From Phaeosaccion multiseriatum (taxonomy: Eukaryota > Protista > Ochrophyta, other classes), in assembly GCA_965112735.1 (NCBI GenBank), contig OZ218956.1, positions 3,534,001-3,598,000 of the forward strand: a DNA stretch of 64,000 nucleotides, written 5' to 3'. Positions 19,582-55,138 of this stretch are shown here, piece by piece. The position numbers were made by a program, and so were the translations under genes. The notes under the pieces are model-generated. The model ran no database searches and had not been told where the DNA came from. It was given only the letters and a program-made list of their open reading frames with translations. The stretch's first letter is position 1, and each line of letters starts with the position of its first letter.

Positions 19582-20300
19582 GTGTGAGGCAAGGGGAAGA
19601 CGATGATGATGATGATGAGGATGATGATGATGATGATGACGATGATGATGATGATGAGGAGGAGGAGGAGGAGGAGGAGGGGGAGGAGGAGGAGGAGGAG
19701 GAGGAGGAGGGGGCGGGAGGGGGAGGAGCAACAGGAGGAGAAGGATTATGAAAGATTCACACACGGAGCAAGGAGAGGGTGGGAGGATGACAGAACGGGA
19801 GCACCGGACAGAGCCAGGAGGGAGGGGTAGGAGGAGAAGCGGAGGGAAGAGGGGGGAGGGAGGAGAGGGAACGAGCCTCCCCTCCAAGCAAGCAGACCAT
19901 CGAAGCTCTTGCCCGGGTTGGCGGGGCGCAAAGTGTCGCTAGTTAAGATGATGGTGCCACGGAAAGCAGTCACGATCAATGATAGTAGTGTCCTCCTGGC
20001 CGACTCATCTAATGCCCTGCAGGCTGTTTGGTTTACTCACATTTTGTGCTGTGTTGGAAGAATGCATTTTTTTCGAGAGGGAGAGGAGGAGGCAATTGTT
20101 GAGGATTGCTCGGCTTCTGGCCACTAACTTGTACTCGAAGTACTTCGCACACGAAGGGGAGAGTGCTCCAGTTGGTAATCCGAAGACATCTGTGTGCCGT
20201 GGATACTCACGGCCGTGCGGCGCAGCCACCAAGCCCTCACTCACACTTCAGTTCATTTTCTAAGCTAACAAAATCAAGTGCGAGTGTTTGGCTGTTTCGG

Positions 20301-22748
20301 ATGAGGATGATGGTAAGCAGCTGCAGCATAAGAAGCGGCGGGGGTAGGAGGTTCGGGTGTAGCAGGCGGTGGAGAGCTCCCGGTGGAAGAGATGCTCCGT
20401 CTGCCGCCTCTGCCGCGGCCCCTGCCTGGGGTGTCACTCCAGCGTATCTGGCAGCCTTCCACGCCACGGCACGCCAACGGTGCTTGTCAAGCGGGTGGGG
20501 TGGATCTCTGGGGGCGAGTAGTACCAGTGAGGGGGCTTGTTTCTCAACAAGTAGTATTCCCCCTCCTGAAGAGGAGGGAGGGGGGCAGTCGTTGTATCTC
20601 GCGACACTTGAGCGTTTGGAGGCCGCGCGGGAGGTCAGGGACTGGGCGAGAGTACTCGGCGAGTGGGACGCAGCGGTGCGGTCGCCGCTGCTCATTGATG
20701 CGCCTTTTGTCGACGCAGTCATGGAGGCTTTGGCTCACTGCCGCCCACCATGGGAGGAGACGCTTGCCCTGCTGAGGGACATCAAAATTCGTCCTAACGT
20801 CCTATACTACAACATCGCCATTGACGCCTGCGGTCGGGCTCAGAGATACGATGAAGCCATGGATCTTCTTCGGGAGATGCTTGTAGTGGGATTGCAGCCG
20901 GACTCGCAAACCTTCTCGGCAGCGATTGTGGCGTCTGGCTTCGGGGGGAGGGCAGACCAGGCACTGCAGCTTCTGAAGGACATGCAAGCACAGGGGCTGC
21001 CACCCGTCAATCACAATTTGAGCGCTGCTATCGCCGCTGTGGGCAGAGCTGGCCGGCCTGAAGAAGCGCTGCAGCTGCTGGAGAGATTGCCCGAGTACGG
21101 CTTGGAGGCCGATGCCGGCAACTTCGCTGCCGCCATCGAGGTGTGCAGTGGGGCGGGATGGTTGGACGCGGCATGGGACCTGTGGGACGAGGTGCTGGCG
21201 GGAGACGTGGTTCTGGATACGAAAGTGTGCTCTGCGGTCTTGCGTCTCTGTGTCGAGTCGAGGAGATCGGACAGGGCTTTGGAGCTATTGAAGTATATGA
21301 AGGAGGAGGGACCCGCTCCCGATGTATGGTGCTACAACATCGCCATTGATGCCTGCGCCAAGGCCCGTCAACACGTTGATGCTTTGGGGTTGTTGAGGGA
21401 GATGAAGGAAGGAGGACCCGCTCCGACTGTGCACAGCTACAGTGCTGCCATTGATGCATGTGCCAAGGCTGTTCGACACGTGGAGGCGTTGAGGCTGTTG
21501 CGGGAGATGAAGGAAGGAGGACCCGCTCCGACTGTGTACAGCTACAACGCTGCTATTAACGCATGCAACAGGGCGGGTCAACACGTGGAGGCGTTAGGAC
21601 TATTGGGTGAGATGAAGGACGAAGGACCCGCTCCGGATGTAGTCACCTACACCACCGCCATTAATGCATGCGCCAAGGTTGATCGACACGCGAAGTCATT
21701 GGCGCTATTGAGGGAGATGAAGGAGGAAGGACCCGCTCCCGATGCACGTACCTACACCGCTGTTATTAACGCATGCGCCAAGGCAGGTCAACACGTGGAG
21801 GCAGTACAGCTCTTGAGGGAGATGAAGGAAGGAGGACCCGCTCCGACTGTGTACAGCTACAACGCTGCTATTCGCGCATGCGCCAAGGCGGGTCAACACG
21901 TGGAGGCGTTAGGACTATTGGGTGAGATGAAGGACGAAGGACCCGCTCCGGATGTATGGAGCTACTACGCCGCCATTGATGCATGCGCCAAGGTTGGTCG
22001 ACAGGCGAAGTCATTGGCGCTATTGAGGGAGATGAAGGAGGAAGGATTCGCTCCCGATGCACGTGCCTACACCGGTGTTATTGTTGCATGCGCCAAGGCC
22101 GGTCAACATGTGGAGGCAGTGGACCTCTTGAGGGAGATGAAGGAAGGAGGACCCGCTCCTGAAGCATGGAGCTACAATGCTGCTATTAACGCATGCGCCC
22201 AGGCCGGTCAGCACGTGGAGGCGTTGGGGTTGTTGAGGGAGATGAAGGAAGGAGGACCCACGCCGGATGTATGGAGCTATAGCGCCGCGATTAACGCATG
22301 TGCCAAGGCCGGTCGACACGTGGAGGCGTTGAGGTTGTTGAGGGAGATGAAGGAAGGCGGACTCACGCCGGATGTATGGAGCTACAACCCCGCGATTAAC
22401 GCATGCGCCAAGGCTGGTCGACACGAGGAGGCGTTGGGGTTGCTGAGGGACATGAAGGAGGAGAGCCTCGCCCCGACTCTGCCCAGTCTCTCCCCGGTAC
22501 TGCGTGCGTGTGCTGAGGCGGGGCAGTACGAAACCGCCGAGGAGCTGGGGTTGGAGATTCTGAAGAGGTGCCATAGCGAGGCACCAGACAAGCTCTGCCT
22601 CGAGACTGCCAAGCATGTTATGCGCAGTGCGGCATACGGGGACGAGAGGGCGGAGAGGGTCACGGAGAGTCTGATCCATGCAGCAGTGCACGGCAGAAAG
22701 AGAGAAGTGGAGGAGGGGAAGGCCCAGAGGCACCCAAGCGAGCTGTGA
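20301..22748 (+). CDS. P-type pentatricopeptide repeat (PPR) protein, intronless, probably mitochondrial
   Basis: About 17 tandem 35-aa motifs (PDVWSYNAAINACAKAGQHVEALGLLREMKEGGP). The first ATG is at 20301, followed by an Arg/Ser-rich N-terminus nearly free of acidic residues, with RQRCLSS. Confidence 0.93.
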   Translation: MRMMVSSCSIRSGGGRRFGCSRRWRAPGGRDAPSAASAAAPAWGVTPAYLAAFHATARQRCLSSGWGGSLGASSTSEGACFSTSSIPPPEEEGGGQSLYLATLERLEAAREVRDWARVLGEWDAAVRSPLLIDAPFVDAVMEALAHCRPPWEETLALLRDIKIRPNVLYYNIAIDACGRAQRYDEAMDLLREMLVVGLQPDSQTFSAAIVASGFGGRADQALQLLKDMQAQGLPPVNHNLSAAIAAVGRAGRPEEALQLLERLPEYGLEADAGNFAAAIEVCSGAGWLDAAWDLWDEVLAGDVVLDTKVCSAVLRLCVESRRSDRALELLKYMKEEGPAPDVWCYNIAIDACAKARQHVDALGLLREMKEGGPAPTVHSYSAAIDACAKAVRHVEALRLLREMKEGGPAPTVYSYNAAINACNRAGQHVEALGLLGEMKDEGPAPDVVTYTTAINACAKVDRHAKSLALLREMKEEGPAPDARTYTAVINACAKAGQHVEAVQLLREMKEGGPAPTVYSYNAAIRACAKAGQHVEALGLLGEMKDEGPAPDVWSYYAAIDACAKVGRQAKSLALLREMKEEGFAPDARAYTGVIVACAKAGQHVEAVDLLREMKEGGPAPEAWSYNAAINACAQAGQHVEALGLLREMKEGGPTPDVWSYSAAINACAKAGRHVEALRLLREMKEGGLTPDVWSYNPAINACAKAGRHEEALGLLRDMKEESLAPTLPSLSPVLRACAEAGQYETAEELGLEILKRCHSEAPDKLCLETAKHVMRSAAYGDERAERVTESLIHAAVHGRKREVEEGKAQRHPSEL

Positions 22749-23194: not shown

Positions 23195-26100
23195 ATGGCG
23201 CCAACCACAGCGAACCCAGAGCGGCGGCGGCAATCACATTCACAATCATTTCTGCTGAAGGTGGCTCTCGTTCTTGCTCTAACCTTTCTCTGGCTCTGCA
23301 GCGACGCTCAAACGGCTGCAGCAGCGAATTCTCAAGGCTCCAGTGGCCCCTTGCAAGCGACTTTGCTGGACGGCACGGGTCTGCCCCTGCTGCAGAGTCG
23401 GGGATCATCGAGTCGCAGTGGAGGGGGGGGGGGAGGAGCGCCACTACACCTGCAGTACCTGGTAAGAGGAGGGTCGAAGAGAGGAGAGGAGAGGGAAGGA
23501 AAGGAATGGAGAGGAAAGGAAAGGAAAGAAAAGGAAAGGAGAGGAGAGGAGAGGAGAGGACAAAGGAGGAAGACGGAGCAAAGGAAAGGAGAGGAGAGCA
23601 CGGGGAAGAAACGCATCGAGCTCTTGGTTTTCTCTTCCTCGCCCCACGCCTCCTCTCTCTTGCTCGATGATTCTTCTTTCTCGTCATTCTTTCCTTTCCC
23701 ACACACTCTCCATTTCCATCCTAAGTATGGCCTTCTGACGTTCCCTCTCTCCTGATGGGTCTCTCTCCCCCCCTCCCCCTCTATCACTCTCCCTCTCCCC
23801 CTCTCCCGGTCTCCCCCCTCCCCTCTACCTCCTCCCCTTCCTCCTTTCAATCTGATCCGCCATCCCCGCTCACCAGGGTGTGCTGGGTGTCAAGCACGGC
23901 AAACGAGAAGTCACCACCTCGGTGGACCTCCGCCCCCTCCTCGACAACGTTCGAGCCATCAACATCAACGGGTACTTCTGCCTCCTCCCCTCCTCCTCCC
24001 CTCTCACAACTAGATCATCTATACCACCAACGGCCCGGGGCTTTACACTCACCCACCCCTTCCCGGGCCCTTCGAATGGGCAGGCCGTCGCCTTCATCCT
24101 GCCTCCGTCCCTCTCTCTGGGCGGAGGCAGTGGGGCGGGCCAGCATGCAGTTCACGTCAACGCTTCCTCCCTCCCCTCCGAGGGCCTAGAGGCAGAGCTG
24201 GTAAGCAACAGCACCCTCCTCCTCCTCCTCTCCGGTGGCCTCTCCCCTGGAGCTGGCGATGGCGCTGCTGGCGTATCACCAACTGTTGCCGCAGCTGCGG
24301 TAGCGCCCGTGGCGGTCGAGCTTCACTCCTTCATCCGACAGCCCGACGGTTCCCCAGCCTTGGCGACGATTCTGCACCAACACGGCCTCGATCTTGTCCC
24401 CAGACCGCCACCAGTTGGTGATGTATCGTCGTCGTCGTCTCCTGTGGCACGCCTGGGCACCCCCTTCGGCGACCTGCGAATCGCCCCTGAGGGGTCCTTG
24501 TTGCTGGGCAGTGGGAGAGGAGGTGTATCCACTGTATCCGCTGTATCACCAACTACTACAGGTGCTGCTGCAGTAGATGGTGTGCCACCAACTGCTGCAG
24601 GAGAGGCCGACGGCCTGGTGGTGGTGGAGGAGCGAGGCGTGACTGTGACAGGCCATTCCATCAATATCACGGCCTCCGCCAGCCCTAACGCAGGTAGGGA
24701 GAGGCTGGCTGACTGACCGACTGACCGACTGACCGACTGACTGACTGACTGACCGACTGACTGACTGACCGACTGACTGACTGACCGACTGACTGACTGA
24801 CCGACTGACTGACTGACCGACTGACTGACTGACTGACTGACTGACCGACTGACTGACTGACTGACTGACTGACTGACTGACTGACTGACCGACCGACTGA
24901 CTGACCGACTGACTGACTGACTGACTGACTGACTGACTGACTGACTGACCGACTGACTGACGGACTGACTGACGGACTGACTGACGGACTGACTGACCGA
25001 CTGACCTTGTCTTGCCATTGATACTCGTATGTATGTGTGTATGTGTGTATGCCTGCAGTTTTCAGCCTTCCCTCTTCTCTCTCTCTCTCTTTATCTGCTG
25101 GGCCTTATCCTCCCTGCATCCATACCAGTTGGTGATATACCCATCTCATCTGCGTGGGCCGCTCTCTGTCTCCGCCTCTGTTCCCCCCTCTCTCTGTGTC
25201 TCGTCTCTCCCCCACCCCTCTTCCCCACCCCTCTCTCCACAGGAGACGACAGCACAGCCAGCGGCCCAAGGAGGCACCCTAGGGGGCAAAACCCTAGTGG
25301 GCACAACCCGAGGGGGCACAACCCGAGGGGGCACAACCCAAGCGGCATCTCCCTCTCTGTGGCAGAGTCCACCAGCCTCCCCGGGGGGCGTGTGCTCATC
25401 GCGGCGGGTCATAGCGCCTCACAGGGGGGGGGAGATGTAGTGCTAGAGGCGGGCAGGGGAGGGGCAGGCTCCAAGGGGGGCGGGATACAGTTGGCGACTG
25501 CGGCGGGGGACGGCAGGTGAGAGAGGGTGGCGTCCTGGCACCTCTGTGATCGTCCACATCCACTGCCATCCCCTGCTCTGTGATCGTCCACATCCACTGC
25601 CATCCCCTGCCTCAATCCCGGCCTTTACCTCGTCTCTTCTTGTCTTGTCTCTTGTCTCTCTCTCTCTCTCTCTCTCGGAAATGGATGTGATGCATCAGCA
25701 CCAGCAGCACCGTGTCTGGGGACGTTTTGATTCAGACGGGAAGCGGCCACGAAGCCGCTGGAGGCATTCTCCTGCAGGCAGGAGGGGCAGCTGCAGCGGG
25801 TGGTGATACAGCAGGAGGAGGAGGGAGAGGAGGAGGAGGAGGAGGAGGGGCGACGGGACGAGGAAGCAAGGGGGCCTCGTTAGGGCTCATGGGAGGGGGG
25901 GGCGGAGGGGGGACGGCAGTGGATGGGAGGGGGGAAGGGAGCAGCAGTACGAGTGCCAGTGCTGCGGACGGGGGCGGCGTGCGAGTTATGAGCGGAGCAG
26001 GGGCGGCAGCGACGACTACTGCGACCACTACCGCTACTGTATCACCAACTGCCGAAGTTGGAGGAGGGGTGCCAGCAGGAAGGAGTGGTGACGTGGTCAT

Positions 26101-29100
26101 TGGGACGGCAGAAGCGCAGACTTCAGAGGGGAGCACGGGAAGCGTGGGGCTCTTCAGCGGAGGACAGGGGACGGGCAGCGGCGATGTTAGTGTCAGGACA
26201 GGGGACACTGCCAGGGGACCGAGTGGGGCCATACTGTTGAGGGCAGGGGCGGCAGAGGGGGCGGGGGGGCAGGTGGGGAAGGCGGGGTCGGAGTATGCCC
26301 AGGGGGGGATGGTGATTCTCGAGGGAGGGCGATCGAGGGGAGGGGGCGGTGGACTGGTGGAGGTGAGGGGAGGAGGAGGAGGAGGAGGAGGAGGAGCAGC
26401 AGGAGGGAAGAAGCCGGGTGTTGGTGTATCACCAACTGCTGCTTCGGGAGTGGCGTTGACCGAGCGGGTCTGTCGGGGGGGGGACGCTCCGGGCTCGGAG
26501 GAGCAGTGCGTTGACGTGCCTCTGTCAGCCGCGGCCATCCAGCGGGCAGAGGAGGCGGAGAGGGAGAGGGAGAGAGAGCGGCAGAGAGAGGGGGGCGTGC
26601 TGCTGAGTGATGCGGACCGAAGCGCCAGCCTCGTTGTGGCGCAGGCGGTGGTGCGGCTTGAAGCGAAGCGAGACGTAAGGCTTGAGGCGGAGGAGGGGCA
26701 GGTGCGCGTAGAGGCGGGGGAGGCACTGAATCTCACCTCTCCCACTCTGGTGTGGCGTCCTACGGGTGTTGGTGCTCCGTCCTCATTAGCATCTGGCGGC
26801 GTACCTGAGCTGTACGGGAACGCCTCTGCGCTGTCCCTGTCGGCCCCAAAGACCGTGCTTGTGCACTCAATGGACGAGTTCCGCATCACGTCTCCAGGGG
26901 GGCAGCTCCACGGCGACCCGGGGGGGGTGAGCCTTTTCACCGGCGGCCCCGGGGGGGCGGAGGACGGCGGCGGCGGGGGGGGGGCAGTGTCGCTTGTGGC
27001 AGGGGCAGGCAGCGCGACGCTCGTGCTGCAGGATTCACAGATGGCTGGACAGGCCCAACATGTCAAGCTCAAGGCGGGGCAGGGAGGACTGTGGCTGCAC
27101 GCGGCTGCTCACGCCGACCATGCGGCACTCGGCAGAGCTGCGGCTGAAGAGGCAACTGCGGCAGGGAAGGGGGCAGGGGAGAGCGCCAGGCTTGGGGCGG
27201 AGGCGGTCAAGGCGGCAGGATTGGCGGCGGAGGCTGCAAAGAAGGTTGGGGAGGGCGGGGTGGAGGGGGTCGGCGCCGGGGGGGTAGGAGGTGGAGAGGG
27301 CTCGGCTGGGTCTGGGTTGGGCCTTCGGTTGACGAGTGAGAGCGGCGTGAGGGTGTGGGCAGCCAAGGAGTCTTCTTGGGAGGCGCCGGAGTTGGATCTG
27401 CGAGCAGAGCAGGTGAGGGAGGGAGGGACAGGGGCCTTGTGTGTGTGTGTTTATCCCCATGCGAAAGGGCCACGAAGTCACTCGTCATCGGTCGGAAAGC
27501 GCCGTTCCCTCCCCTCCCCCCCCCCACCCCAAGCTCTAACCTTATAACACACACGTCGTCTTACTTAACCTTACGTCACTCAGGCGCTGCGACTGTCAGC
27601 GGAAGGCGCCGGGCTGACTCTAAACGGCTCGCACTCGCTCCGTCTCGAGATGAAGCAGTTGGTGCTACAGCAGGCCGGGTCTGCGCCAGCAGGAGGAGGC
27701 GGAGGAGGCAAGCCAGCTACAAGTGCTCTATCTCTCGATGCAGAGGGGGTCGTCGGTTTGTCTGGGGCGAAGGAGGTGCGCTTATGGCAGGGCCCCAGCC
27801 ATAGCACTGGCACTACAACTGGTCCTGGTCCTGGCCATAGCACTGGCACGGAAAGTGGGCTCTTACTCAACGCCACCCACTCTCTCCTGGGAGGGCCTCA
27901 CGTCATTCTGAGGGGCGGTCAACCGAAGGAGGGAAGGGCAGGGGACGGGGCAGGGGTACTGCATCTATACGGCGCAGGAGGCGGGGGAGGATCAGGCGCA
28001 GGTGGAGCAGCAGTTGGTGGTACAGGAGGTGTGCGGATGGAAGGCTCCCGTGCCGCAATCCACGCGTCGGAGTCCGTCGTGACCCAGTGCGCCTCCAACA
28101 GCAGCTCGATGGAGCTCAGCCCAACAGGGGGTGGGAGGGCACACGTGTGGGGTGAAGGAGTGGCCCTTGTGCAAGCCGGTAGGGAGGGGAGGGCCCTCCT
28201 GAGTGCGGGAGAGGCAGTGAGGGTCAGTTCCACAGAGGGCGGAGTCCAAGTGGTGGGGCAGCAGGGACTCGAGTTGAGTGTGCCCGGCTTCGGTGCGCCC
28301 AAGGTTACCGCAGAGGGCCTGCCTGGGCTGCCATCTACAACTAGAGGTGTTGGTGGTGCGCCTGGTGGTGGGGCCATCTGTGAGCATAGCGGCGGTGGAA
28401 GCTGTGTGACGTTGAGCTCGGAGGGAATTGCCTCAGCGGCGGCGTCAGACTATCGCGTGGATGCGGGCAAGGAGGTGCGGCTGGTGGCGGGGCAGACAGG
28501 GACCATTGCTCTGCAGGTATTGCCTGGGGCAGGGCCAGGGGCAGGGGGGGGGGAGGGAGGGAGCTTGTTGACCCTGTCTGGGGCAGGAGGAGGAGGAGGA
28601 GGAGGAGTGGGTGTGGGTGGGCTGAAGGCCAACGTCCCTTCGCTTAGTGTTGATGCCACCGATGCGGTTCGATTAGAGGTCAAGGGTCATGTCAAGGGAG
28701 GGGCGGGGATGGCAGCTCATGGGGGCTCGGCTGCAGTGGCACTGGATGGCGGCGGTGGGGCTTCGCTGACGGCATCAGGAGAGGCATCTGTCTACTCGTC
28801 AGAGGTGAGTGAGGAACGGAGGGGGGGAGGGAGGGAGGGAGGGAGGGAGGGAGGGGATCAGTGAGTGAGTGAGTGATCTAGGCCCTCCCTTTCCCTCTCC
28901 CTTCAGGTTGCTCGTCTGCACGCAGACAAGAGAGTCATCATTGGTGAAGAAGCAGGCGTATCACCAACAGCCGCAGCACCGACCGCAGGACAGGGCAGCA
29001 CGGGCATCGCTCTGCACCTTCCCGAGAAGCGCCTCTTGTTGAGGGGTGGGGAGAGCGTCGACGTTGGAGCTGAGCTTCACATGTGTGTGTTTGCAGGGGA

Positions 29101-32100
29101 GGGACGCCTCGTCAAGGGACAGCCCCCCACCGCTGCTGCCGCCGCCGCCGCTGCCACTCGAGCACAGATCAGAGGAGGAGCGGGAGGGGCGGGGGGAGGG
29201 GCAGGGGGCGTGGTCGGGGGGGCAGGGGTGTGCTCACATGCAACAGAGCTGCAAGTGCACACATGGGGGCACCGCATTTCCGCCGCAGCTGTGGAGGGGA
29301 TGGAGTGGAGTGTGGGGAAGGAGGGGCCGGCGGGGGCCGCTGCTAACGGTCAGACGCTTCTCTCCCTCAACACTTCGGGGGCAGAGCTGATTGCGCGGGA
29401 GGTGGGTAGGGGGTGAGGAGGTGCATGGGAGGGAGGGGGTTGTGTGTGTGTGTGTGTGTGTGTGGGCGTGCGTGTGGGTGGGATGTGTGGGTGTGTGCGT
29501 GCGTGAGTGTGTGCGTGTATGTGTATGTGTATATTTACCTCGTCGTTCTCCCATCCGGGGGTGGTGCCTTCTCTTCAGAATGCGCAGCTCCGCGCCTCAT
29601 TCATTCACGCTCTCCTCCCTCCCTCCCTCCGTCTCTCCCTCCCTCCCTCCTCCCCTCCCTCCCTTCCAGTCTATCCGCTTGCAATCAGCAGACCCCAGCA
29701 AGCTCTCTTCGGCCGCCTCCCTCTCCCTGGGCATGGAGGGAGGACGAGGAGGCAAGAGCAGCAGGCTGGAGGCAGCTGCAGACACACTCTCTCTTGCCAG
29801 CCATAGAGCGACACCCGGGGGGGGGGGCTTGGAGATGAACAGCACAGGGGCGTGCCTCTATAGCCACAAGCAGGTATGGAGCAAGTGCAAGTGCAAGTGC
29901 AAGTGCAAGTAGGGGCGTTGGTGATATGGTAGAATAAGTCACAGAAGATGAGTCAGTGAGTCCTGTCTTCGAAAAGAAAGAGATGGGGGGGGGGGGGGAG
30001 GGTTGCAGGACGGGGGTGAAATCCTGAGGACACTACGCTAATTGCTTGCTCTATATACGCTCTATCTATCAATCTTCTTGTCTATATGTGCACAGGTGTT
30101 GGCCTCCGTGGGGGACGGATCCGTCTTTCTGGATGTGTCTCCGGGCAGAGGAAGACTTGCGGCAGGAGCACCGGCAGGGGGCGGAGCAGCACTAGGGGCA
30201 GCAGTTGGTGATACAGGGACAACGGCAGGGAGGGGGGCCACCGGGCCGGGCGGGGAGGTGTGGCTACAGGCTGGGCAGGAACCGCGCCCCCTGGGGTTGC
30301 GGGGGAAAGGGTTCAGTGCTGTGAAAGTCACAGCTGGCGGGGTAGACATTGCTTCGGAAGGAGTGGGGCTCTTCGCGCAGGAGGATATGGTGAGGGAGGG
30401 AGGGAGGGAGGGAGGGAGGGAGGGAAGGAGGGAGGGAGGGAGGGGGGGAGGGAGGGAGGGGGGGGGTGGGTAATAAGTCTGGTGAGTCGAGCAGGATGCC
30501 TCAAGCTTCAGCACCACACTGCTACCCCTCCCTCCCTCCTCCGTATGACCAACTCGCTCAGGTGCTCAAAGCCGGCAACGAGGTCCATCTGTACTCGGGG
30601 GCTGCTACTCGCGGGCCTCATGGAGTTGGGCCCCCCTGGACCCCCAATCAGCTCAGCGGGCTCTCAGAGGCCTTCCTCACCAACGCCACCGCAGGCATGA
30701 GTGCCCCTCATAAGGTGTGAAGGGAGGGAGTTGGGCATACAGAAGGAGGGAGGGAGGGAGGGAGAGAAATAATGCCCGTCCAGTCGCTCACTCCTCCTTC
30801 TCTTCCTTCCTCCTTCTCCCTCTGCCTCGAAGATCGCACTCCTTGCCGGCCGCGGCACCTTGGCGGCTCAGGGGCAAATCGAGCTCAACGCCTCCGACAG
30901 CCGAGTGATGCTCAATCACACCCATGTAGCGCTCATGGCGGGCAACGGTAAGGCACTGAGAGGCTGAGAGGCACTCGTCGGTTAGGAGGACGAGGAGGAG
31001 GAGGAGGAGGAGGAGGAGGAGGAGGAGGAGCAGGAGGAGAAGGAGGAGGAGGAGGAGGAGGAGGAGGAGGAGCAGGAGGAGGACGAGGAGAAGGAGGAGG
31101 AGGAGGAGGAGGAGGAGGACGAGGAGGAGGAGGACGAGGAGGAGAAGGAGGAGGTCCCTCCCCTCCCCTCCTCCCCACCCCTCACCTCCCCTCCCCTCCC
31201 CTCTCTCACCTCACCTCCCGTCTTTCACCTCACCTCACCTCACCTCCCCTTCCCTCCCCTCCCCTCTTTCACCTCACCTCCCCTTCCCTCCCCTCCCCTC
31301 TTTCACCTCACCTCCCCTTCCCTCCCCTCACCTCTTTCACCTCACATCCCCTCCCCTCCCCTCCCCTCCTCCCCACCCCTCACCTCCCCTCCCCTCCCCT
31401 CTCTCACCTCACCTCCCCTCCCCTCCCCTCTTTCACCTCACCTCACCTCCCCTCCCCTCCACTCCCGTCTTTCACCTCACCTCACCTCACCTCCCCTTCC
31501 CTCCCCTCCCCTCTTTCACCTCACCTCACCTCACCTCACCTCCCCTCCCCTCCCCTCTTTCACCTCACCTCCCCTTCCCTCCCCTCACCTCTTTCACCTC
31601 ACATCCCCTCCCCTCCCCTCCCCTCCTCCCCACCCCTCACCTCCCCTCCCCTCTCCTCTCCTCCCCTCGCCACCCAGTGCCTCTAAGCGACGCTCTGATG
31701 GCCCATATGCCCCTGTCTGGTCTACCCGCTGTGACATCTCCTGCCCGGCTGCTGCTCGCCTCTGCCGGAGACACCTTCCTCTCTGCCAAGAGGAGTGTGT
31801 CGGTAGGAGCAGCAGGGCTCCTGAGGCTCGAGTCAGACAAGAGCACCGCTGTCAGAGCCCAGGGGGGCTTGTTCCTCGGGACGAAGGAGTATCGAGCCGA
31901 TAGTGGTGAGTGGGGGTGGGGTGGGGTGGGGTGGGGTGGGGTTGAGTTGGGTGGGGTTGGGTTGGGCTGGGTTGGGTGGGGTGGGGTGGGATGATGGGTT
32001 GGGGTGGGGTGGGTGGGTCGCAAGCCTGGCCTAGGGTGGGGTTGGGTTGAGTTGGATGGGGTGGGGTGGGGTGGGGTGGGATGGGATGACGGGTTGCGGT

Positions 32101-35100
32101 GTGTGGGTCGCAAGCCACTTAGACCAAGCCACTCCCCACCTCACCCGCACCCACATCCCTCATCCTCACCCCTCACCCTCAACCCTCACCCTCACCCCTC
32201 CCCCCCACTCAAACCCTCACCCTCACCCTCATCCTCTTGCCCCTGTCCCCTCCCTCTCTCTCTTCCCTATTTCCCCAGGAGTCAATCCCGTGCCCCATGG
32301 GCATGTGTTGCTGGCGCCGAGGGAGACCTTCGCTGTCGGCATCGGACCGTCATTTTCCGAGTGGCCGCACTCCAAGGACCGTCTGCTGCCATCGCTGGTC
32401 ACCATTAGCAATGTCTCCGCTGCTTCCTTCGTCCCAAGAGAGGGGTCTTCTCCTCCGCTCCCCCCGACTCGAGTCAACCCCGGTGCGTCAAGGCAGGAGG
32501 AGTCACAGCTGTTCATTCATTCTGAAAGCACTCCTGACCCCTCCACTCCCCTGCCTTCCCTTCCCCTCCCTCCCTCCCTCCCCTCCTCCCCCTCCCCTCC
32601 CCTCCCTTCCCCTCCACCCCCCTCCACTCCTCCCCCTCCCCTCCCCTCCCCTCTCTTCCCTTCCCCTCCCCTCCCTCCCTCCCTTCCTTCCCCTCCCCTC
32701 CCTCCCTCCCTCCCTCCCTCCCTCCCTTCCCCTCCCCTCCCCCCCCCCCCCTCCTATCCGTACGCTGCCCATCAGGACCCGACGCGCACCTTTCCATCCT
32801 CTCCGACGGCGACGCTGCCATGACCATCCTCTCCCCCGACGGTTTCACCTCCTCCTTACGCTTCGGCTCCTCCTCCCCCTCCACACACCCCGCGCCTCCA
32901 CGCACCGCAACCGCCAAGATATACGTCCGAAACGGTCACCAATACAACGAAACGGCACTCTATGTTACCCTTGGTGAGGGGGCCCAGGGTCCTACCCTGG
33001 GACCCTCTAAAGCGAGCAAGTTGGTCCTGACGGGCCAGGGTCGGGTCGGGTTGGGCAAGGGGGATGAGCTTGACAAGTGGGGCGGTCAAGCTCTCAAGGG
33101 CACCGTGCATATGTTCGGGGTGGGGGGCAAGGCAGGGGGAGGAGTGGGCGTGCTACCCACGTTGGTGATACAGGGCAACACGGCGTCGGGTTTGGAAGGG
33201 AATGTCGTGCAGCTGATTGGGCAGTCGGCGACGGAACCCAATACTATTGTGCTCACGGCGAGGAAGAATGGCGTGAGGGTGGAGCCCTTTGAGGGGAGCC
33301 GACATTGGATGGTGATGCAGAGGGGCGCCACCACACCCGCCCTCACTGCGTTTGGAGCGCATGTAAGTGAGGGAGGGAGTGGGGAGGGGAGGGGAGGGAG
33401 GGATGGAGGGAGGCGGTGGAGGGAGGGAGGGAGGGAGGGAGGGAGGAAGGGAGGGAGGAAGGGAGGGAGGGGTGTTAGTGAGAGAGTGAGGGGGGGGGGG
33501 GGGTTTGAGAGAGAAGGAGAGAGAAAAAAAGAAAGACAGAAAGACAGAAAGAAAGAAAGAAAGAAAGAAAGAGAACTTCTTGTTGTGACTCTCTTCCTCC
33601 TCCTTCTCCTCCTCCTCCTCCTCCTCCTCCTCCCACTCCTCTTCTCCCCCCCCCTTCCAACACCCCCTCTCCCGCAGGACAACCAATTCATGCCCCACAG
33701 CCTGCTGCTGGCCCACTCCGAGGGCGGTTCTGAGAGCGAATGGCAATCTCACGAGGGAGTGGGGAGGGCAAATAAGGCCAACCCTTCAGTCACCGCCGCT
33801 GCCTTCAGTCCCAAGGGCACCACAGGCTTCGGCACGGCGCCCACAAGTGCAAGGTGAGGGAGGGAGGGAGGGATGGCAGTAGATGGGGGGAGGGAGGGAG
33901 GGAGGGAGGTGGGGAGGGAGGGAGGGAAGGAGGTGGGGAGAGAGGGAGGGAAGGAGTGAGGGAGGGAGGGAGGGAGGTGGGGAGGGAGGGATGGAGTGAG
34001 GGAGTGAATGAGTGAATGATATAGTGAGTGATTTCCCCCCTCTCCCCATCCCCCCAGAGTCACAGTGGGAGGCAAGCTTCTCTCCGAGGAGGTGCACGTC
34101 ATGGCCTCGCAGGCGTGGATGAGAGACGTCACCCCCGCAAAGGCCGTTAACCCTGACGTCACCGCCAAGCTGCTTGAACTTCAAGTGCTCAACTTCAATT
34201 GGAACGCGCAAGCGGCGGAGAGGTTCGGAGTGAGTCCGGATGCGCGGCAGACGGGCTTAAGCGCCAGTAACGCTCAGCAGGTAAGGTAGGCACTGTACCG
34301 TTGTGTCTTTCATCACTCCCGGTTGGCCCCCCAACCGATGTATGGGTATCGATGTCGATATAGTGTGTCGATGTGTATATCGAGTATGTCGCCACTCCCC
34401 TCTTGTCCCTTTGCCACACCCGCTTACCCACACACCCATATACCTCCATCTGCCTCTCTCTACCTCTTCCTTCGACCTCCTCCTCCTCCTCCTCCTCCTC
34501 CTCCTCCTCCTCCTCCTCCTCCTCCTCCTCCTCCTCCTCCTCCTCCTCGTCCTCCTCCTCCTCCTCCTCCTCCTCCTCCTCCTCCTCCTCCTCCTCCTCC
34601 TCCTCCTCCTCCTCCTCCTCCTCCTCCTCCTCCTCCTCTGTCTGTACCCGCTGCCCCTGTCCATGCCCTTGCCTCTTTCAGGTGCTTCCCGAGCTCGTCT
34701 CTCTAGATCCGGCGGCGGGCGCGGGTACAGCCTCGATCTCGCACAGTCGTCTCCTGTCGCTGCTGCTTCTCTCCTACCAGCAAGAGGTTGGGGTCGGGCT
34801 ACCCAAGCTGGTGCAGCAGGGCAGCGAGCACGGGGCAAGGCTGGAGCAAATGGCAGCAGATGGGACTGCCTTTGCGGCGTCGGTTAACGCCACTTTGGAA
34901 GGGCTGAAGACGGCAGCAGATGGCCATGGAGCAAGGCTGACGCGGGGGGAGGAGGAGGGTCGGCAGAGCAATGCGTCTGTCACAGCGCTCCATACGGCGG
35001 TTTCTGAGTTGCAGCTGTCTCTCGCTGCTTGTGAGGACAAGGGCGGCAGGTCAGTGACACTCACGCACGGAAGGACGGATGGATGGCAGCCGATTGAGGG

Positions 35101-35892
35101 GCTCTTTATTCGTATGTGTGTGTGTTTGCGTGTGTGTGTGATGATAACAACACCCTGCTTCTGTTTCGAGTGCACCCGTTCCTCATGCCTCGGCATCTCT
35201 CCTCCTCCCTCCATAGCACACCCTCACCCACACCCCTTTACCCATATGCCTCTGTCCGCCCCCTCCCCTCCCTTCCCATCTACTGCCATCCCCTCCCCCA
35301 AGGCTGGAGGCGGTGGAGGCCCGTCTGGAGGCAGCAGGGAAGCTTCTGGACTCACAGCGGGCGGCCCTTGCAAGCGCTGAGCAGAGTATCCTCGCCATGC
35401 AGCAGCTGCTGGATGACCAACGCGCCACCCTGGAGAGGATGGAGGCAGTCCTGGAGCCTATCGTCGCTCAGCCGAGGTATGGGAGGAGGGGAGGGAGGGA
35501 GGAGGAGGGCTAAGCGCTATGATTCTTAAAAAGTCACCTCCAACCCCGACCGACCTAACCCCAACCCCCCCCCCCTCCCCCCCTCCGTCCCTCCCTCCCC
35601 GGGTGATGGCCGCAGCTACCCCGTGACAACAGAGGAGGTACTCTATCTGCAAGCCATAGAGTCACTCGAGGCCCAAGCCACCGAAGCTTTCCTCCTCTCC
35701 TCCTCCACGTCCTCCTCCTCCTCCGGCACGCCCGGAGCGCCCCCCCCTCCTCCTCCTACGGCCAAGGCTCTTCAGGCGCACCTCGACTCGGAGTCTGTCC
35801 GTCAGGGCATTTTGACGGCCGCACAGGCGAGGCTGAAGCGTTGGAACGGACATCTTGGGGTCCTCAGGAAGACCGCAGCCGCTCGGAAATAG
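23195..35892 (+). CDS. Secreted ~2,600-aa tail-fibre/tail-spike-like protein with beta-strand repeats, a peptidase-S74-like intramolecular chaperone domain and a C-terminal coiled coil (~18 exons)
   Basis: Signal peptide FLLKVALVLALTFLWLCSDA. Approximate exons: 23195-23461, 23877-24693, 25243-25516, ~25700-27412, 27584-28804, 28907-29401, 29670-29873, 30096-30389, 30562-30714, 30832-30948, 31678-31905, 32279-~32482, 32776-33362, 33678-33853, 34058-34280, 34682-35049, 35303-35476, 35616-35892, with GT-AG boundaries. Repeats include GGDVVLEAG, SGDVSVRTGD and SGAILLRAG. The C-terminal region reads ASQAWMRDV...LLELQVLNFNW...TGLSASNAQQVLPELV...ISHSRLLSLLLLSYQQE. Confidence 0.75.
24711..25004. repeat. 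(GACT/GACC)n microsatellite, intronic
   Basis: Seen directly. Confidence 0.95.
31155..31665. repeat. (CCCCT/CACCT)n compound satellite with internal block duplication, intronic
   Basis: Seen directly; it follows a (GAG)n tract in the same intron. Confidence 0.85.
34476..34638. repeat. (CTC)n microsatellite, intronic
   Basis: A near-perfect trinucleotide tract in the intron that interrupts the S74-like domain. Confidence 0.95.
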
Positions 35893-42485: not shown

Positions 42486-44763
42486 CGAAAGAGCAGTAGG
42501 TTAGTAAAACACGTCACCCAACGGGAACATGATGTCCTCTCTGCCTCCCCGCCCCGCCCCGCCTCGCTCTCAGGGCTGCCGTCCCGTCCTATCCATCGTC
42601 GATCTTGGGAGGACATAGAGGCATACACGGGCATACGGCCAAGCTTCAAAGTGATCACATACGGCCAAGCTTCAAAGTGATCACACGGGAGCGTGCGGCT
42701 TGTGTCCGGCCGTGACCAGGACGACAGGAGTGACATGAGGAAGAGACGCCCCAAGTAGGCCCCCACCAGGAGGGCCCCCACCAGGAGGACACACACAGAC
42801 AGGCAAACAAGCAAGCGAGCAAGCAAGCAAGCACATGACTCCCTTTCTCCTACCGCTCCCTCCCTCCCTCCCACCCACCCCTTCCTCCCTCTCTCCCTAC
42901 CTACCTTCCTCCCTCCCTCCCTCCTTCCCTCCCTCCTTCCCTCCCTCCCCTCCCCTCCCTCCCACCCCACTCTCCCTCCCTCCCTCCCTCCCTCCCTCCC
43001 GTTCCTGCCTCCCTCACTCACCGCTTCCCTTCGCAGCACTTGCAGGGGATGCTAATGGTGAGCTTACTCTTCTTGTCCTTCATGAGCACCACGCCTGTCG
43101 AGTAGCACACTCCGCAGGGCATCGTTCCGCGGCCCATACAATATGGACAAGACATTCGCTGTGGAGAGGTGGGGAGACCGCACAGGTCAGGACAGGATAG
43201 GGAAGAAGGAAGGAGGGGGGAAGAGGGGCATGGCGGGGATCAATCAATCGAGCGGACAACAGACGAGGGGTTGAGCGCAACAAGTTAGTTGACAAGTGCC
43301 TTCTGGAGTCAGACAACACAAGAGAAGGCCACAGAATGTATGGCAAGGGCCGATGACCTCTCTGCTCTCCTTCCTCCCTCCTATCCCCAACAGGTCCTTG
43401 GTGTCAGGTGGTTGGTTGGCAAGCAAGCCCGAGCCCAAGTCTATACACACCGCGCTGGCTTGAGGCAGGTCAAGCACTGACCCGCTGACCCACCTCGTCC
43501 CCCAGGGCCAACTCACTCACTTCTCCACTCACTCACTGAACCAGTCAACCACTCAACTCCCTCACTCCCTCACTCACCCACTCACTCCCTCTCTCTCTCT
43601 CTCTCTTGCCCGCTCGCTCACTCACTCACTCACTCACTCACTCACTCAACTCCCTCACTGAACCACTCAACTCACCCACTTAACTCATTCACTCACTCAT
43701 TCGCTCACTCAATCATTCACTCACTCACTCATTGGCTGACTGAATGACCGACTGACTCAACTCCCTCCCTCACTCCCTCATCCGCTGACTCTCTCACTCA
43801 CTCATCCACTGACTCTCTCACTCACCTGTGCTATCTTCTGCTTCCTGACCTCGTACGCCACAAGCGTGCCAAGCACTCCGACGGCGCCTCCCGCAAAGGC
43901 GCAGAACAATTCGGTAAAGAAGTCAACGTTCGAGCTCAACCCCGCCACTACCTCAGGCTCCATATTCAGTGCCGTTGGGGCTCTACTCCTGCTGCTGCCA
44001 CTCGGACTCCTGCTGCTGCCACTACCGCTCCTGCTTAAACTGTCTATGCTGCCGCTGCTGCTTCTGCAACCGGTAGCCGCTATTACCCCCCCCAGTCCCT
44101 GCTGCTGCCTCGCACCCCATAGTGCTGTCCCTCCTCTCCCTCCTCCTCCTCCTACTACTCGTCCTACTCCTTCTTCAGAGACCCGAAGTGTCATCCCGTC
44201 GTCAGTCAGGTGAGCCGGGAGCAAGGCAGGCACCCGTTGCCGCCTGCGGTGTTGGGAGGAAGTTGGCAACGGGTAAGTAAGCGAGCACTTGATGGGAAAG
44301 CCCGCGTATTCATGTACGTCAAGAGCAAAGAGAGTTTGATTGCTCTGCCTTCCGAGGAAGCAAGCACTTCCCACACTGTTGGTTACATCCAACTGGCCCC
44401 CATCAAAGGACACACACGTTGCATAGTAGCTTCCTCTCCCTCTATCCAGCTCCAGCATCTGCACAGCCTCTCCCCAACTCCAACCAAACAGCAGCCAACG
44501 GGCTGCGTCCAAGGGTCTTCTAAGGCAGGCCACGCACACGGCACCTTACATTCTTACCGTTTGTTTGTCTTACTCCTCCCGCTCTTCCCGTTCGAGTGCT
44601 GTTGCTGCTGCTGCTGCTGCTCGTGGCCCGCCCAGCACATAGAGGAGAGAGTGGCAGCGAATGGAGGGGAAACGAATGCCTGCACAAATGACCCTACGCT
44701 CAAGCTCGAGACATGAATCAAGAACACCACTATTGCCAACGCGACAGCCGAAGAGCGGCCCAT
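42332..44763 (-). CDS. ORANGE-like plastid DnaJ-type zinc-finger protein
   Basis: Bipartite leader MGRSSAVALAIVVFLIHVSSLSVGSFVQA-FVSPP. ELFCAFAGGAVGVLGTLVAYEVRKQKI resembles plant OR (FSGGAVGVISALMVVE). Zinc-finger motifs are CPYCMGRG, CGVCYSTG, CKCCEGKR (exon 43160-43022) and CLMCQGDG (exon from 42423). The 3' end is tentative. Confidence 0.78.

Positions 44764-53695: not shown

Positions 53696-53750
<55 letters not shown>

Positions 53751-53923: not shown

Positions 53924-53956
<33 letters not shown>

Positions 53957-55106: not shown

Positions 55107-55138
<32 letters not shown>

What the first reader, a model, noticed from the sequence alone, without database searches (positions are those of the whole stretch)
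23195..35892. Domesticated phage/bacterial tail-fibre-like giant secreted glycoprotein encoded by an ~18-exon algal nuclear gene
Seen in sequence: a signal peptide, then ~2,000 aa of short Gly-flanked beta-strand repeats. These are GGDVVLEAG, SGDVVIGTA, TGSVGLFSG and SGDVSVRTGD, followed by ~8-aa-period runs such as AKRDVRLEAEEGQVRVEAGEALNLTS, ASDYRVDAGKEVRLVAG and GVGLFAQEDMVLKAGNEVHLYS. After them come LTGQGRVGLG, SPKGTTGFGTAPTSARVTVGGKLLSEEVHV, an S74-like chaperone domain and a coiled coil. Established knowledge: such repeats typify trimeric beta-helices of gp5/VgrG spikes and tail fibres. GNVGIGT..P..KL.V.GKI.A.EV.V is the signature of bacterial (e.g. Bacteroidota) tail-fibre-domain proteins, and S74 chaperones drive trimer folding of tailspikes. 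The best-studied eukaryotic carrier of S74 is the MYRF transcription-factor family. Inference: an ancient horizontally acquired fibre, now fully intronised and secreted, builds a long trimeric extracellular filament (adhesin, wall or zoospore appendage, flagellar hair element, or extrusome).
Basis: partly seen in the sequence, partly recalled or inferred. Interest (0 to 1): 0.9.

Follow-up and report, generated by a model that had tools for sequence, protein, structure and literature searches.

The report
Giant algal fibre protein, tail-fibre cap
An intron-rich nuclear gene of a photosynthetic protist encodes a 2,600-residue secreted glycine-rich protein with no known relatives, except that its tail end matches the trimer-forming "chaperone" module of phage tailspikes and bacterial surface fibres, here without its self-cutting residues.

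Summary
An 18-exon model on the + strand (23195-35892) joins through 17 canonical GT..AG introns into one stop-free reading frame of 2,593 codons.

The protein has one strongly hydrophobic segment, an N-terminal signal. It carries twice the chance number of N-glycosylation sites. A strand-turn motif (hydrophobic-x-hydrophobic-x-[A/G]-G) recurs with a weak period of about 8 residues.

Residues 2235-2356 are homologous to the S74/ICA chaperone domain and the loop motif before it. The best matches are bacterial secreted fibres (Bdellovibrio, Bacteroidota) and viral fibres. The match runs across two splice junctions. The Ser-Lys catalytic dyad is not conserved, so self-cleavage is doubtful. A coiled coil follows.

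The first ~2,200 residues have no detectable relative in 1.84 billion representative proteins, phage genomes, or viral and metagenome contigs. There is no DUF2345 or Gp5_C match, and AlphaFold on single exons failed. The trimeric beta-helix therefore remains an inference.

The 64-kb window holds no viral hallmark genes and no paralogues. The donor of the module cannot be resolved.

Verdict: a real feature, and a new eukaryotic cellular variant of S74-capped fibre proteins.

The parts
23195..23461 (+). Exon 1 (aa 1-89). Start codon; signal peptide at about aa 1-38 (23195-23308): basic n-region, 17-residue hydrophobic core, S-D-A at positions -3..-1.
   Evidence: Kyte-Doolittle 19-mer maximum 2.08 at aa 18-36, the only strongly hydrophobic segment
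23877..24693 (+). Exon 2 (aa 90-361). The 5' edge is uncertain; 24084 is an alternative.
   Evidence: splice-site enumeration
25243..25516 (+). Exon 3 (aa 362-452). Holds the first GDVx-hydrophobic motif. The 5' edge is uncertain.
25708..27412 (+). Exon 4 (aa 453-1021), the largest exon. Gly-rich strand-turn motifs and the 8-residue-period run at aa 764-797.
   Evidence: sub-threshold DUF3540 hit on the periodic run; zero relatives in 1.84e9 representative proteins
27584..28804 (+). Exon 5 (aa 1022-1428).
   Evidence: donor GAG|GTGAGT, acceptor CTCAG|G
28907..29401 (+). Exon 6 (aa 1429-1593).
29670..29873 (+). Exon 7 (aa 1594-1661).
30096..30389 (+). Exon 8 (aa 1662-1759).
30562..30714 (+). 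Exon 9 (aa 1760-1810).
30833..30947 (+). Exon 10 (aa 1811-1848). The 5' edge is uncertain; 30872 is an alternative.
31678..31905 (+). Exon 11 (aa 1849-1924).
   Evidence: sub-threshold T6SS_Vgr hit
32279..32482 (+). Exon 12 (aa 1925-1992).
32776..33362 (+). Exon 13 (aa 1993-2188). Less Gly-rich module with a G-R-V-G-L-G motif. No relatives found.
33678..33853 (+). Exon 14 (aa 2189-2246). Its end carries the loop motif before the S74-like domain.
34058..34280 (+). Exon 15 (aa 2247-2321). N-terminal two thirds of the S74/ICA-like core.
   Evidence: Pfam Peptidase_S74 15.5 bits, E = 0.021, profile positions 12-50 of 58
34682..35049 (+). Exon 16 (aa 2322-2443). The rest of the S74/ICA-like core (to about aa 2356, window 34786), then the start of the helical region. 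The 3' edge is uncertain.
35303..35476 (+). Exon 17 (aa 2444-2501). Coiled coil.
   Evidence: weak hits to coiled-coil families; heptad count and composition
35616..35892 (+). Exon 18 (aa 2502-2593) and the TAG stop.
33816..34786 (+). Tail-fibre-type C-terminal module in genomic coordinates (aa 2235-2356, interrupted by two introns): loop motif plus S74/ICA-like domain.
   Evidence: tblastn 49.7 bits, E = 3e-8, to Bdellovibrio locus L274, with 11 more hits; HMM of 166 S74 domains

Best explanation
This is one nuclear, spliceosomal-intron-rich gene of a photosynthetic protist. It encodes a 2,593-residue secretory-pathway protein.

Shown:
- The exon chain.
- An N-terminal signal-like hydrophobic segment and no other membrane segment.
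- Enrichment of N-glycosylation sites.
- A Gly/Ala/Ser-rich body (aa ~170-1850) studded with hydrophobic-x-hydrophobic-x-[A/G]-G strand-turn motifs with a weak 8-residue period.
- A C-terminal module (aa 2235-2356) homologous to the loop motif plus S74/ICA chaperone domain of phage tailspikes, viral fibres and bacterial secreted fibres, followed by about 150 residues of coiled coil.

Inferred:
- As in those fibres, the C-terminal module and coiled coil bring three chains into register, and the body then folds from that end into a long trimeric beta-rich fibre on or outside the cell. It would act as an adhesin, or as a wall or surface appendage element.
- The SDxxxK Ser-Lys dyad is not conserved, so the module probably stays attached as a permanent trimer cap instead of cutting itself off.
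- The module was most likely acquired long ago from a bacterium or a virus. It now carries two host-type introns and host composition. It was joined to, or has diverged together with, a body that is now lineage-specific.
For: Gene model. Coding signature. Signal segment and sequon excess. Motif enrichment and periodicity.

S74 homology:
- Pfam partial hit on exon 15.
- An HMM of 97 viral S74 domains hits only aa 2283-2351, across the exon 15|16 junction. It scores 10.3 bits against a null maximum of 6.8 in 2,000 shuffles.
- hhalign probability 75%, E = 2.6e-5.
- tblastn of aa 2190-2420 gives L274 49.7 bits at E = 3e-8, L226 43.5, L169 43.1 and L231 42.0. In all, 12 hits are listed at E <= 6e-4. 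The six alignments inspected are colinear, and the hits listed map to the same stretch. The L274 and L231 alignments span both junctions.
- An HMM of 166 domains gives E = 7e-6, and 17.8 bits against a null maximum of 5.6 in 3,000 shuffles.
- The matched proteins are Pfam S74 at 56-65 bits. Two of them (the Bdellovibrio proteins L274 and L231) are 1,500-1,850-aa proteins with a signal peptide, a fibre body, S74 and a terminal coiled coil. L226 has the same layout in 599 aa. L256 (1,742 aa) is cut at its N-terminus and carries about 300 further residues after S74.

Comparable families: Bdellovibrio MAT fibres of this architecture are trimeric surface adhesins, and S74 acts as chaperone and protease in them (PMC10769870). 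The ICA domain drives trimerisation in MYRF (PMC3742443).

Host context: a PPR gene, a split thioredoxin gene, no viral genes and no paralogues.
Against: - No transcript or protein evidence, so the exon chain is a model.
- The body has no homologue anywhere. There is no internal sequence repeat and no confident structure (pLDDT 33 and 31). It could be largely disordered rather than a beta-helix.
- The Pfam S74 score on the exon piece is below the gathering threshold.
- The catalytic motif is absent, so classic S74 behaviour cannot be assumed.
- The MAT N-terminal domain is not detectable.
- The direction and donor of the transfer are unresolved. The algal branch is very long and lies in no supported clade.
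Confidence: 0.55

Rival explanations
1. The gene descends from a fibre gene of a eukaryotic virus (a polinton-like virus, virophage or giant virus) that integrated into the algal genome. It was later intronised and either domesticated or is decaying.
For: Polinton-like viruses of protists carry S74 at the C-terminus of modular fibre proteins of up to 3.9k aa (PMC12220804). Giant-virus MAGs were among the S74 loci recovered (L091, L115, L117, L153). One of the top matches, L169, is a viral contig.
Against: - Seventeen spliceosomal introns filled with host-type microsatellites.
- Composition like the flanks.
- No viral hallmark domain in the ten largest other ORFs of the 64-kb window, and no paralogue.
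- No hit of exon 13 in viral contigs, nor of exons 4, 5, 15 and 16 in phage genomes.
- The best matches and nearest tree rows are bacterial.
Confidence: 0.2
2. The body is an intrinsically disordered or loosely structured Gly/Ala-rich matrix or wall protein, not a beta-helical fibre. The S74-like tail only links three chains together, or is a relic without function.
For: - 17.7% Gly and 14.2% Ala, with long poly-Gly tracts.
- AlphaFold pLDDT of 31-33.
- No Gp5_C, DUF2345 or haemagglutinin-repeat match.
- No homologue anywhere.
- The catalytic dyad is lost.
Against: - Significant excess of alternating-hydrophobic strand motifs followed by a turn, with an 8-residue periodicity.
- Sub-threshold hits fall on spike-type families exactly at the periodic runs.
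- In every studied carrier, S74 sits on a trimeric beta-structure (PMC10769870, PMC8326128).
- Single-sequence AlphaFold failure is expected for orphan and obligate-trimer proteins.
Confidence: 0.25
3. The model joins more than one gene, or the locus is a pseudogene whose open frames persist because stops are rare in G+C-rich DNA.
For: There are no transcript data. GT and AG are frequent, so some in-frame join nearly always exists. The antisense strand of exon 4 also holds a 446-aa ORF. Four exon edges are ambiguous.
Against: - An open path of 2,593 codons with no stop.
- Strong GTRAG donors and pyrimidine-rich acceptors placed exactly where coding similarity ends.
- Homology to S74 proteins continues in frame across two introns.
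- A G1 codon signature in all 18 exons.
- A signal segment only at the first exon.
Confidence: 0.1

Closest known systems
S74 subgroup of the MAT (mosaic adhesive trimer) surface fibres of Bdellovibrio, and the similar 'tail fibre domain-containing' secreted proteins of Bacteroidota and other bacteria (PMC10769870; loci L274, L231, L226, L264, L211)
   Same: - N-terminal signal and a very long body.
- A G-x-G-T..P...[KR]-[LV]-x-V-x-G loop motif directly before an S74 domain, then a coiled coil at the C-terminus.
- S74 is the only Pfam-recognisable domain.
- These give the best pairwise matches to the algal protein.
   Different: - Eukaryotic gene with 17 introns.
- No SDxxxK dyad.
- The conserved ~130-aa N-terminal domain of MAT proteins is not detectable.
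- The body is much richer in Gly and shares no detectable similarity.
- The helical tail after S74 is about 240 aa, against about 60 aa in the bacterial proteins.
Phage tailspike and tail-fibre intramolecular chaperone domains (K1F endosialidase, GA-1 gp12, T5 pb1; Pfam PF13884)
   Same: A C-terminal position on a fibre. Shared core motifs: L..L.hydrophobic..F.W, G-hydrophobic-x-A, V-L-P-E-L-V, and a terminal helix.
   Different: An HMM of the GA-1/K1F subtype does not detect the algal domain. tblastn against 50,697 phage genomes finds nothing for exons 4, 5, 15 or 16. The catalytic dyad is absent.
MYRF/MrfA, the best-studied eukaryotic ICA-domain proteins (PMC3742443, PMC8326128)
   Same: A eukaryotic cellular gene using a tailspike-type ICA domain followed by a leucine-zipper-like helix.
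   Different: MYRF is a membrane-tethered transcription factor with an Ndt80-type DNA-binding domain, a transmembrane helix after ICA, and a strictly conserved Ser-Lys dyad. The algal protein has none of these. It has an N-terminal signal instead.
Fibre proteins of polinton-like viruses and giant viruses of protists (PMC12220804)
   Same: Giant modular proteins (up to 3.9k aa) ending in S74, found in protist genomes.
   Different: Those sit in intron-poor viral elements beside capsid, ATPase and integrase genes, and carry laminin-G, collagen or phage tail-repeat domains. None of this is seen here.
gp5 / VgrG spike triple beta-helix (Gp5_C, DUF2345, T6SS_Vgr)
   Same: Short alternating-hydrophobic strands with a period of about 8 residues. 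Sub-threshold T6SS_Vgr and DUF3540 hits fall on the periodic runs.
   Different: No profile match reaches threshold, and there is no Gp5_C or DUF2345 hit at E <= 1. This is a resemblance of pattern only.

Membership tests
Peptidase_S74 / ICA domain (PF13884) | Significant sequence match to the family | tested here: met
   Pfam on exon 15 alone is below threshold: 15.5 bits against a cutoff of 22, profile positions 12-50 of 58, because the domain is split by an intron.

On the spliced product:
- An HMM of 166 S74 domains has its only hit at aa 2281-2354, E = 7e-6. It scores 17.8 bits against a null maximum of 5.6 in 3,000 shuffles.
- tblastn gives 49.7 bits, E = 3e-8, to L274, with 11 further hits below 1e-3.
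- The best matches tested (L274, L226, L169, L231, L256) score 56-65 bits on Pfam S74.

Pfam itself could not be run on the spliced sequence.
Peptidase_S74 / ICA domain (PF13884) | Catalytic Ser-Lys dyad in an S-D-x-x-x-K motif | tested here: not met
   In the BLAST and tool-MAFFT register, Ser aligns with Ala2263 and Lys with Met2268. In the alternative MAFFT register they align with Ser2264 and Arg2269. The HMM leaves the motif unaligned. No register keeps the Lys. The dyad is absolutely conserved and required in MYRF and endosialidase (PMC3742443).
Peptidase_S74 / ICA domain (PF13884) | Sits at the C-terminal end of a fibre or spike and is followed by a helical or zipper segment | tested here: met
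   The domain lies at aa 2235-2356 of 2,593. The segment aa 2350-2500 is 60% E/Q/A/L/R/K with a heptad pattern and gives weak coiled-coil family hits.
Peptidase_S74 / ICA domain (PF13884) | Trimerisation-dependent self-cleavage; ICA fold | not testable with these tools
MAT fibres / bacterial tail-fibre-domain secreted proteins | N-terminal signal peptide | tested here: met
   Basic n-region, a 17-residue hydrophobic core and small residues at -3/-1. It is the only strongly hydrophobic 19-mer. This is a heuristic reading, not SignalP.
MAT fibres / bacterial tail-fibre-domain secreted proteins | Conserved beta-rich domain of about 130 aa directly after the signal peptide | tested here: not met
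   An HMM from 11 bacterial N-terminal domains scores -1.2 bits on algal aa 39-360. 682 of 3,000 shuffles did as well.
MAT fibres / bacterial tail-fibre-domain secreted proteins | Loop motif (V-G-G/N-small-x-x-P-x-x-x-L type) before S74 | tested here: inconclusive
   The motif aligns without gaps within the significant L274 and L231 alignments. A motif-only HMM gives non-significant partial hits at aa 2072-2086 and 2238-2252.
MAT fibres / bacterial tail-fibre-domain secreted proteins | Intertwined trimeric beta-helix or beta-prism stalk | not testable with these tools
   AlphaFold on single sequences of exon 5 and exon 13 gave pLDDT 33.1 and 31.1. No multimer mode and no alignment depth were available.
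gp5 / VgrG triple beta-helix (Gp5_C, DUF2345, T6SS_Vgr) | Profile match to the repeat families | tested here: not met
   Only sub-threshold hits: T6SS_Vgr 15.2 bits (cutoff 22.4), DUF3540 19.5 (27.9) and RHS 14.0 (27.9). No Gp5_C or DUF2345 at E <= 1.
gp5 / VgrG triple beta-helix (Gp5_C, DUF2345, T6SS_Vgr) | Strand periodicity of about 8 residues | tested here: met
   Hydrophobic autocorrelation is 0.09-0.15 at lag 8 and 0.1-0.2 at lags 15-16 and 23-24, and negative at lags 3-4 and 11-12, over aa 400-2000. The signal is weak.
MYRF family | Ndt80-type DNA-binding domain before ICA and a transmembrane helix after it | tested here: not met
   No such Pfam hit on any exon, and no hydrophobic segment after aa 36.
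Endogenous polinton-like or giant-virus element | Neighbouring viral hallmark genes (capsid, packaging ATPase, integrase, polymerase); intron-poor genes | tested here: not met
   The ten largest other ORFs of the window have no Pfam domain. Neighbours are a PPR gene and a split thioredoxin gene. The gene itself has 17 introns. Only large ORFs were scanned.

The most novel reading that the evidence does not exclude
A photosynthetic protist builds an extracellular fibre with tail-fibre assembly logic. A bacterial or viral S74/ICA trimerisation cap has lost its protease dyad and is retained as a permanent C-terminal clamp on a lineage-specific, 2,200-residue glycosylated Gly-rich beta-fibre. This would be a second co-option of the ICA module by eukaryotic cells, independent of MYRF and of different function. 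It would be the first such co-option for a secreted structural or adhesive fibre.
Probability: 0.4. Interest if true: 0.7.

Novelty: new variant of a known kind. Interest (0 to 1): 0.5.

Why it matters
S74/ICA domains are known as quality-control caps of phage tailspikes, of bacterial predator fibres and of virus fibres in protists. In eukaryotic cell biology they are known essentially from the transcription factor MYRF.

A cellular, fully intronised, secreted giant protein carrying such a cap would show three things. The tail-fibre folding module has been recruited more than once by eukaryotes. It can survive without its protease dyad. Algae may build surface fibres the way phages build tails.

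It also gives a concrete handle, the C-terminal 400 residues, for testing trimerisation of an otherwise unsearchable orphan protein.

Tried and rejected
Homologue searches that found nothing:
- Exon 4 (566 aa). The word-indexed search was swamped by low-complexity words. The full HMMER scan of 1.84e9 representatives gave 0 hits, not even the window's own genome.
- Exon 13. No hits among proteins, viral contigs or metagenome contigs.
- Exon 15 in metagenome contigs.
- tblastn of exons 4, 5, 15 and 16 against 50,697 phage genomes gave nothing meaningful.
- The PDB sequence search of exons 4, 5 and 15 gave nothing.
- PHROGs and NCBIfam gave nothing useful.

Profile tests that failed:
- An S74 HMM built only from the GA-1/K1F subtype did not see the algal domain. 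That subtype was too narrow, so it was replaced by domains of the 'GFIAQEV' type.
- An alignment that included the algal exon was too divergent to seed a genome scan.
- A motif HMM for the GNVGIGT module was not significant on its own.
- The HMM for the MAT N-terminal domain was negative. My by-eye match of aa 52-67 to the Y-Q-G-x-L..G-x-P motif is therefore rejected.

Structure and repeats:
- AlphaFold on exon 5 and on exon 13 was uninformative, with pLDDT 33 and 31. No fold search was run on such models.
- Self-BLAST found no internal repeats.

Tree and lineage:
- A tree of 96 S74 domains gave the alga a 3.3-substitution branch and no supported clade, so no donor is claimed.
- The lineage could not be fixed. 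The PPR neighbour hits dinoflagellates, brown algae, a dictyochophyte and diatoms at similar levels. Rfam and tRNA scans were empty.

Left out: I did not run Pfam, HHpred or structure prediction on the spliced C-terminus.

Full report
**1. What is in the sequence**

The window is G+C-rich (0.52-0.68) eukaryotic DNA. Between 23195 and 35892 the + strand holds a chain of open segments.

For each of the 17 gaps I listed every GT..AG pair that keeps the frame and avoids stops. Every gap can be closed. In most cases the best-scoring pair lies exactly where the coding-like sequence ends, for example CAG|GTGAGG...CTCAG|G, GAG|GTGAGT...TTCAG|G and CAG|GTAAGG...TTTCAG|G.

The resulting 18-exon model is 7,782 nt and 2,593 codons, with one terminal stop. 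The edges of exons 2, 3, 10 and 16 have plausible alternatives.

Each exon shows the usual excess of G at codon position 1 (0.30-0.60). The introns (111-784 nt) are full of microsatellites such as GAGG, CCCTC, CTGACTGA, AGG and CCT. No transcript data were available, so the chain remains a model.

**2. Properties of the product**

- Composition: G 17.7%, A 14.2%, L 10.1%, S 9.7%, and only 11 Cys.
- The only strongly hydrophobic 19-mer is aa 18-36. It is preceded by Arg-rich residues and followed by S-D-A, a signal-peptide layout. No later membrane segment exists.
- N-x-S/T sites number 17 against 7.3 expected (P = 0.0004). This fits passage through the secretory pathway.
- From aa ~170 to ~1850 the motif hydrophobic-x-hydrophobic-x-[A/G]-G recurs 20 times (6.3 +/- 2.4 expected). 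A GDVx-hydrophobic motif occurs four times between aa 424 and 620 (0.2 expected).
- Hydrophobic autocorrelation has small but consistent peaks at lags 8, 15-16 and 23-24.
- There are no duplicated sequence units detectable by BLAST. The 'repeats' are a recurring strand-turn pattern.

**3. The C-terminal module**

Pfam on the exon pieces gave one relevant hit: Peptidase_S74 on exon 15, at 15.5 bits and E = 0.021, covering profile positions 12-50 of 58. That is below the gathering score of 22, and weak hits of that size also appeared for unrelated families. For scale, the founding member, K1F endosialidase, scores only 36 bits.

The domain is cut by an intron and the tools take no spliced sequence, so I tested it locally.

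- I collected S74 domains from viral contigs by the G-F-I-A-Q-E-V pattern. Ninety-eight of 118 had the [ST][DN]x[RK]xK motif upstream. I collected more from bacterial genomes with an alignment of those.
- An HMM of 97 viral domains hits the 2,593-aa product at one place only, aa 2283-2351, across the exon 15|16 junction. It scores 10.3 bits against at most 6.8 in 2,000 shuffles.
- hhalign gives 75% probability, E = 2.6e-5.
- With 166 viral and bacterial domains the single hit is aa 2281-2354, E = 7e-6, and 17.8 bits against at most 5.6 in 3,000 shuffles.
- tblastn of aa 2190-2420 against the 1.9 Mb of fetched loci gives 49.7 bits, E = 3e-8, to L274 (Bdellovibrio sp. HCB-110). It also gives 43.5 to L226, 43.1 to L169 (a viral contig) and 42.0 to L231 (Bdellovibrio). 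In all, 12 loci are listed at E <= 6e-4. The six alignments inspected are colinear, and the hits listed map to the same stretch.
- The L274 alignment runs from G-T-T-G-F-G-T-A-P-T-S-A-R-V-T-V-G-G (against G-N-V-G-I-G-T-T-A-P-S-E-K-L-E-V-S-G) through F-N-W-N and V-L-P-E-L-V to the last helix. It therefore crosses both the exon 14|15 and the exon 15|16 junction in frame. This supports the homology and the gene model at once.
- The matched proteins are bona fide S74 carriers, at 56-65 bits on Pfam, with no other Pfam domain.

**4. The catalytic motif is not kept**

S74/ICA domains cut themselves at the Ser of S-D-x-x-x-K. The Ser and Lys are absolutely conserved, and both are required in MYRF (PMC3742443). 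The Ser is required in the Bdellovibrio fibre Bd3182 (PMC10769870).

In the alga the corresponding stretch reads M-A-S-Q-A-W-M-R-D-V. BLAST and one MAFFT run align Ser with Ala2263 and Lys with Met2268, with K-D-V against R-D-V. Another MAFFT run shifts by one, giving Ser2264 and Arg2269. The HMM leaves the motif unaligned. In no register is the Lys present.

I therefore file the domain as an S74/ICA homologue that fails the catalytic criterion. Self-cleavage should not be assumed.

**5. After the domain**

About 240 residues follow. Residues 2350-2500 are 60% E/Q/A/L/R/K with a heptad pattern and give weak hits to coiled-coil families. This resembles the shorter coiled coil that ends the bacterial relatives and the zipper needed for MYRF processing (PMC3742443).

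**6. The body is an orphan**

- Exon 4 (566 aa) has no hit at E <= 0.001 among 1.84 billion representatives of about 15 billion proteins. The source genome itself is evidently not in that collection.
- Exon 13 has none either. Exons 4 and 5 have no phage match.
- The whole product matches the fetched bacterial and viral fibre loci only at aa 2224-2334.
- Pfam gives only sub-threshold hits: DUF3540 (19.5 bits) on the periodic run aa 764-797, T6SS_Vgr (15.2 bits) on exon 11, and RHS. It gives no Gp5_C or DUF2345.
- AlphaFold2 on single sequences of exon 5 and exon 13 gave pLDDT 33 and 31. This says nothing either way for an orphan that may fold only as a trimer.

The beta-helix reading rests on three things: the strand-turn motif, the 8-residue period, and the fact that S74 always caps trimeric beta-structures in known carriers. 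It is an inference.

**7. Context and origin**

- Upstream lies a PPR gene (E = 4e-122). Its best relatives are dinoflagellate, brown-algal, dictyochophyte and diatom proteins at about 30-38% identity.
- Downstream are a thioredoxin gene split by an intron, a weak BSD2-type Cys-rich domain and low-complexity ORFs.
- The ten largest other ORFs have no Pfam domain. The window has no paralogue of the gene.

This is host nuclear DNA of a photosynthetic protist of unresolved lineage, not a viral island. A tree of 96 S74 domains puts the alga on a branch of 3.3 substitutions per site, in no supported clade. The nearest rows by path are Bdellovibrio and Bacteroidota. All reference domains were chosen by one motif, so the sample is biased. 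I claim no donor.

Fibres of polinton-like and giant viruses with C-terminal S74 exist in protists (PMC12220804). They remain a possible source.

**8. Comparison with known systems**

The closest known architecture is the S74 subgroup of Bdellovibrio MAT fibres and similar bacterial secreted 'tail-fibre-domain' proteins. These have a signal peptide, a long trimeric fibre, a loop motif, S74 and a coiled coil (PMC10769870).

The algal protein shares the ends of that plan. It lacks the conserved MAT N-terminal domain and the catalytic dyad, and it has an unrelated body.

It is not MYRF-like. It has no DNA-binding domain and no transmembrane helix after ICA.

It resembles gp5/VgrG only in pattern.

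**9. Verdict**

Its interpretation is right about the tail-fibre-type C-terminus and the secretory, multi-exon nature of the gene. The beta-helix, the phage or stramenopile labels and the proposed functions are unproven. Any active chaperone-protease role is probably wrong.

I rate it a new variant of a known kind, of moderate interest.

Noticed in passing
window-wide; core CACCAACTG at 4842, 6386, 6700, 9073, 10078, 16017, 18673, 24277, 24412, 24586, 25126, 26043, 26430, 27656, 28011, 30202, 37030, 57616, 59374, 59392, 59770: A word of about 18 nt, consensus CTGTAYCACCAACTGCTG, occurs on both strands far above chance: 15 matches to a 14-mer against 0.01 expected. It lies in introns and also inside coding exons of the giant gene in both orientations, where it gives V-S-P-T-A-A or A-A-V-G-[GD]-T. 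Its nature is unexplained. It could be a dispersed element footprint or a recombination signal.
   Followed up: partly
window 20106-22748 (+): An apparently intron-free PPR gene (Pfam PPR_2, E = 4e-122) with about 14 near-identical tandem 35-residue repeats. Its best relatives are only 30-38% identical and are spread over dinoflagellates, brown algae, a dictyochophyte and diatoms. The source lineage is therefore poorly sampled.
   Followed up: partly
window 60854-61114 and 61718-62041 (-): A thioredoxin gene split over two exons (Pfam Thioredoxin, E = 4e-11 and 1e-7; W-C-G-P-C in the upstream exon). It confirms eukaryotic host context.
   Followed up: partly
window 43021-43239 (-) and 46714-46998 (+): A Cys-rich C-x-x-C-x-G-x-G stretch with a weak BSD2 Cys-rich-domain hit (E = 0.009, below threshold), and an exon ending in a Rab-GTPase-like I-G-V-E-F..I-W-D-T-G motif with no Pfam hit on the piece.
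   Followed up: partly
window 49068-50909 (+), 52896-55370 (+), 56292-60095 (+): Three long ORFs without Pfam domains: a tandem array of units about 30 residues long (S-S-E-G-x-A-G-S-P-A-V-E-A-A-G type), a poly-Q-rich protein, and an Arg/Gly/Glu-rich protein of 1,268 residues.
   Followed up: no
introns of the gene, e.g. 24705-25005, 30984-31154, 31155-31675, 34476-34638: The introns are largely microsatellite arrays: (CTGACTGA)n, (AGG)57, a CCCTC-based array of about 520 nt, and (CCT)54.
   Followed up: no
loci L274, L231, L256 (bacterial), L169 (viral contig): The bacterial and viral relatives of the C-terminus are themselves giant proteins (1,020-1,844 aa) in which S74 is the only Pfam-recognised domain. 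Large parts of this fibre class are as uncharacterised as the algal body.
   Followed up: partly
window 32913-33020 (aa 2040-2073, exon 13): The HMM of the bacterial MAT N-terminal domain gave its best, non-significant, match (E = 0.32) not at the algal N-terminus but in exon 13, at a Y-x-E-T..V-x-L-G-type motif. This is probably chance.
   Followed up: no
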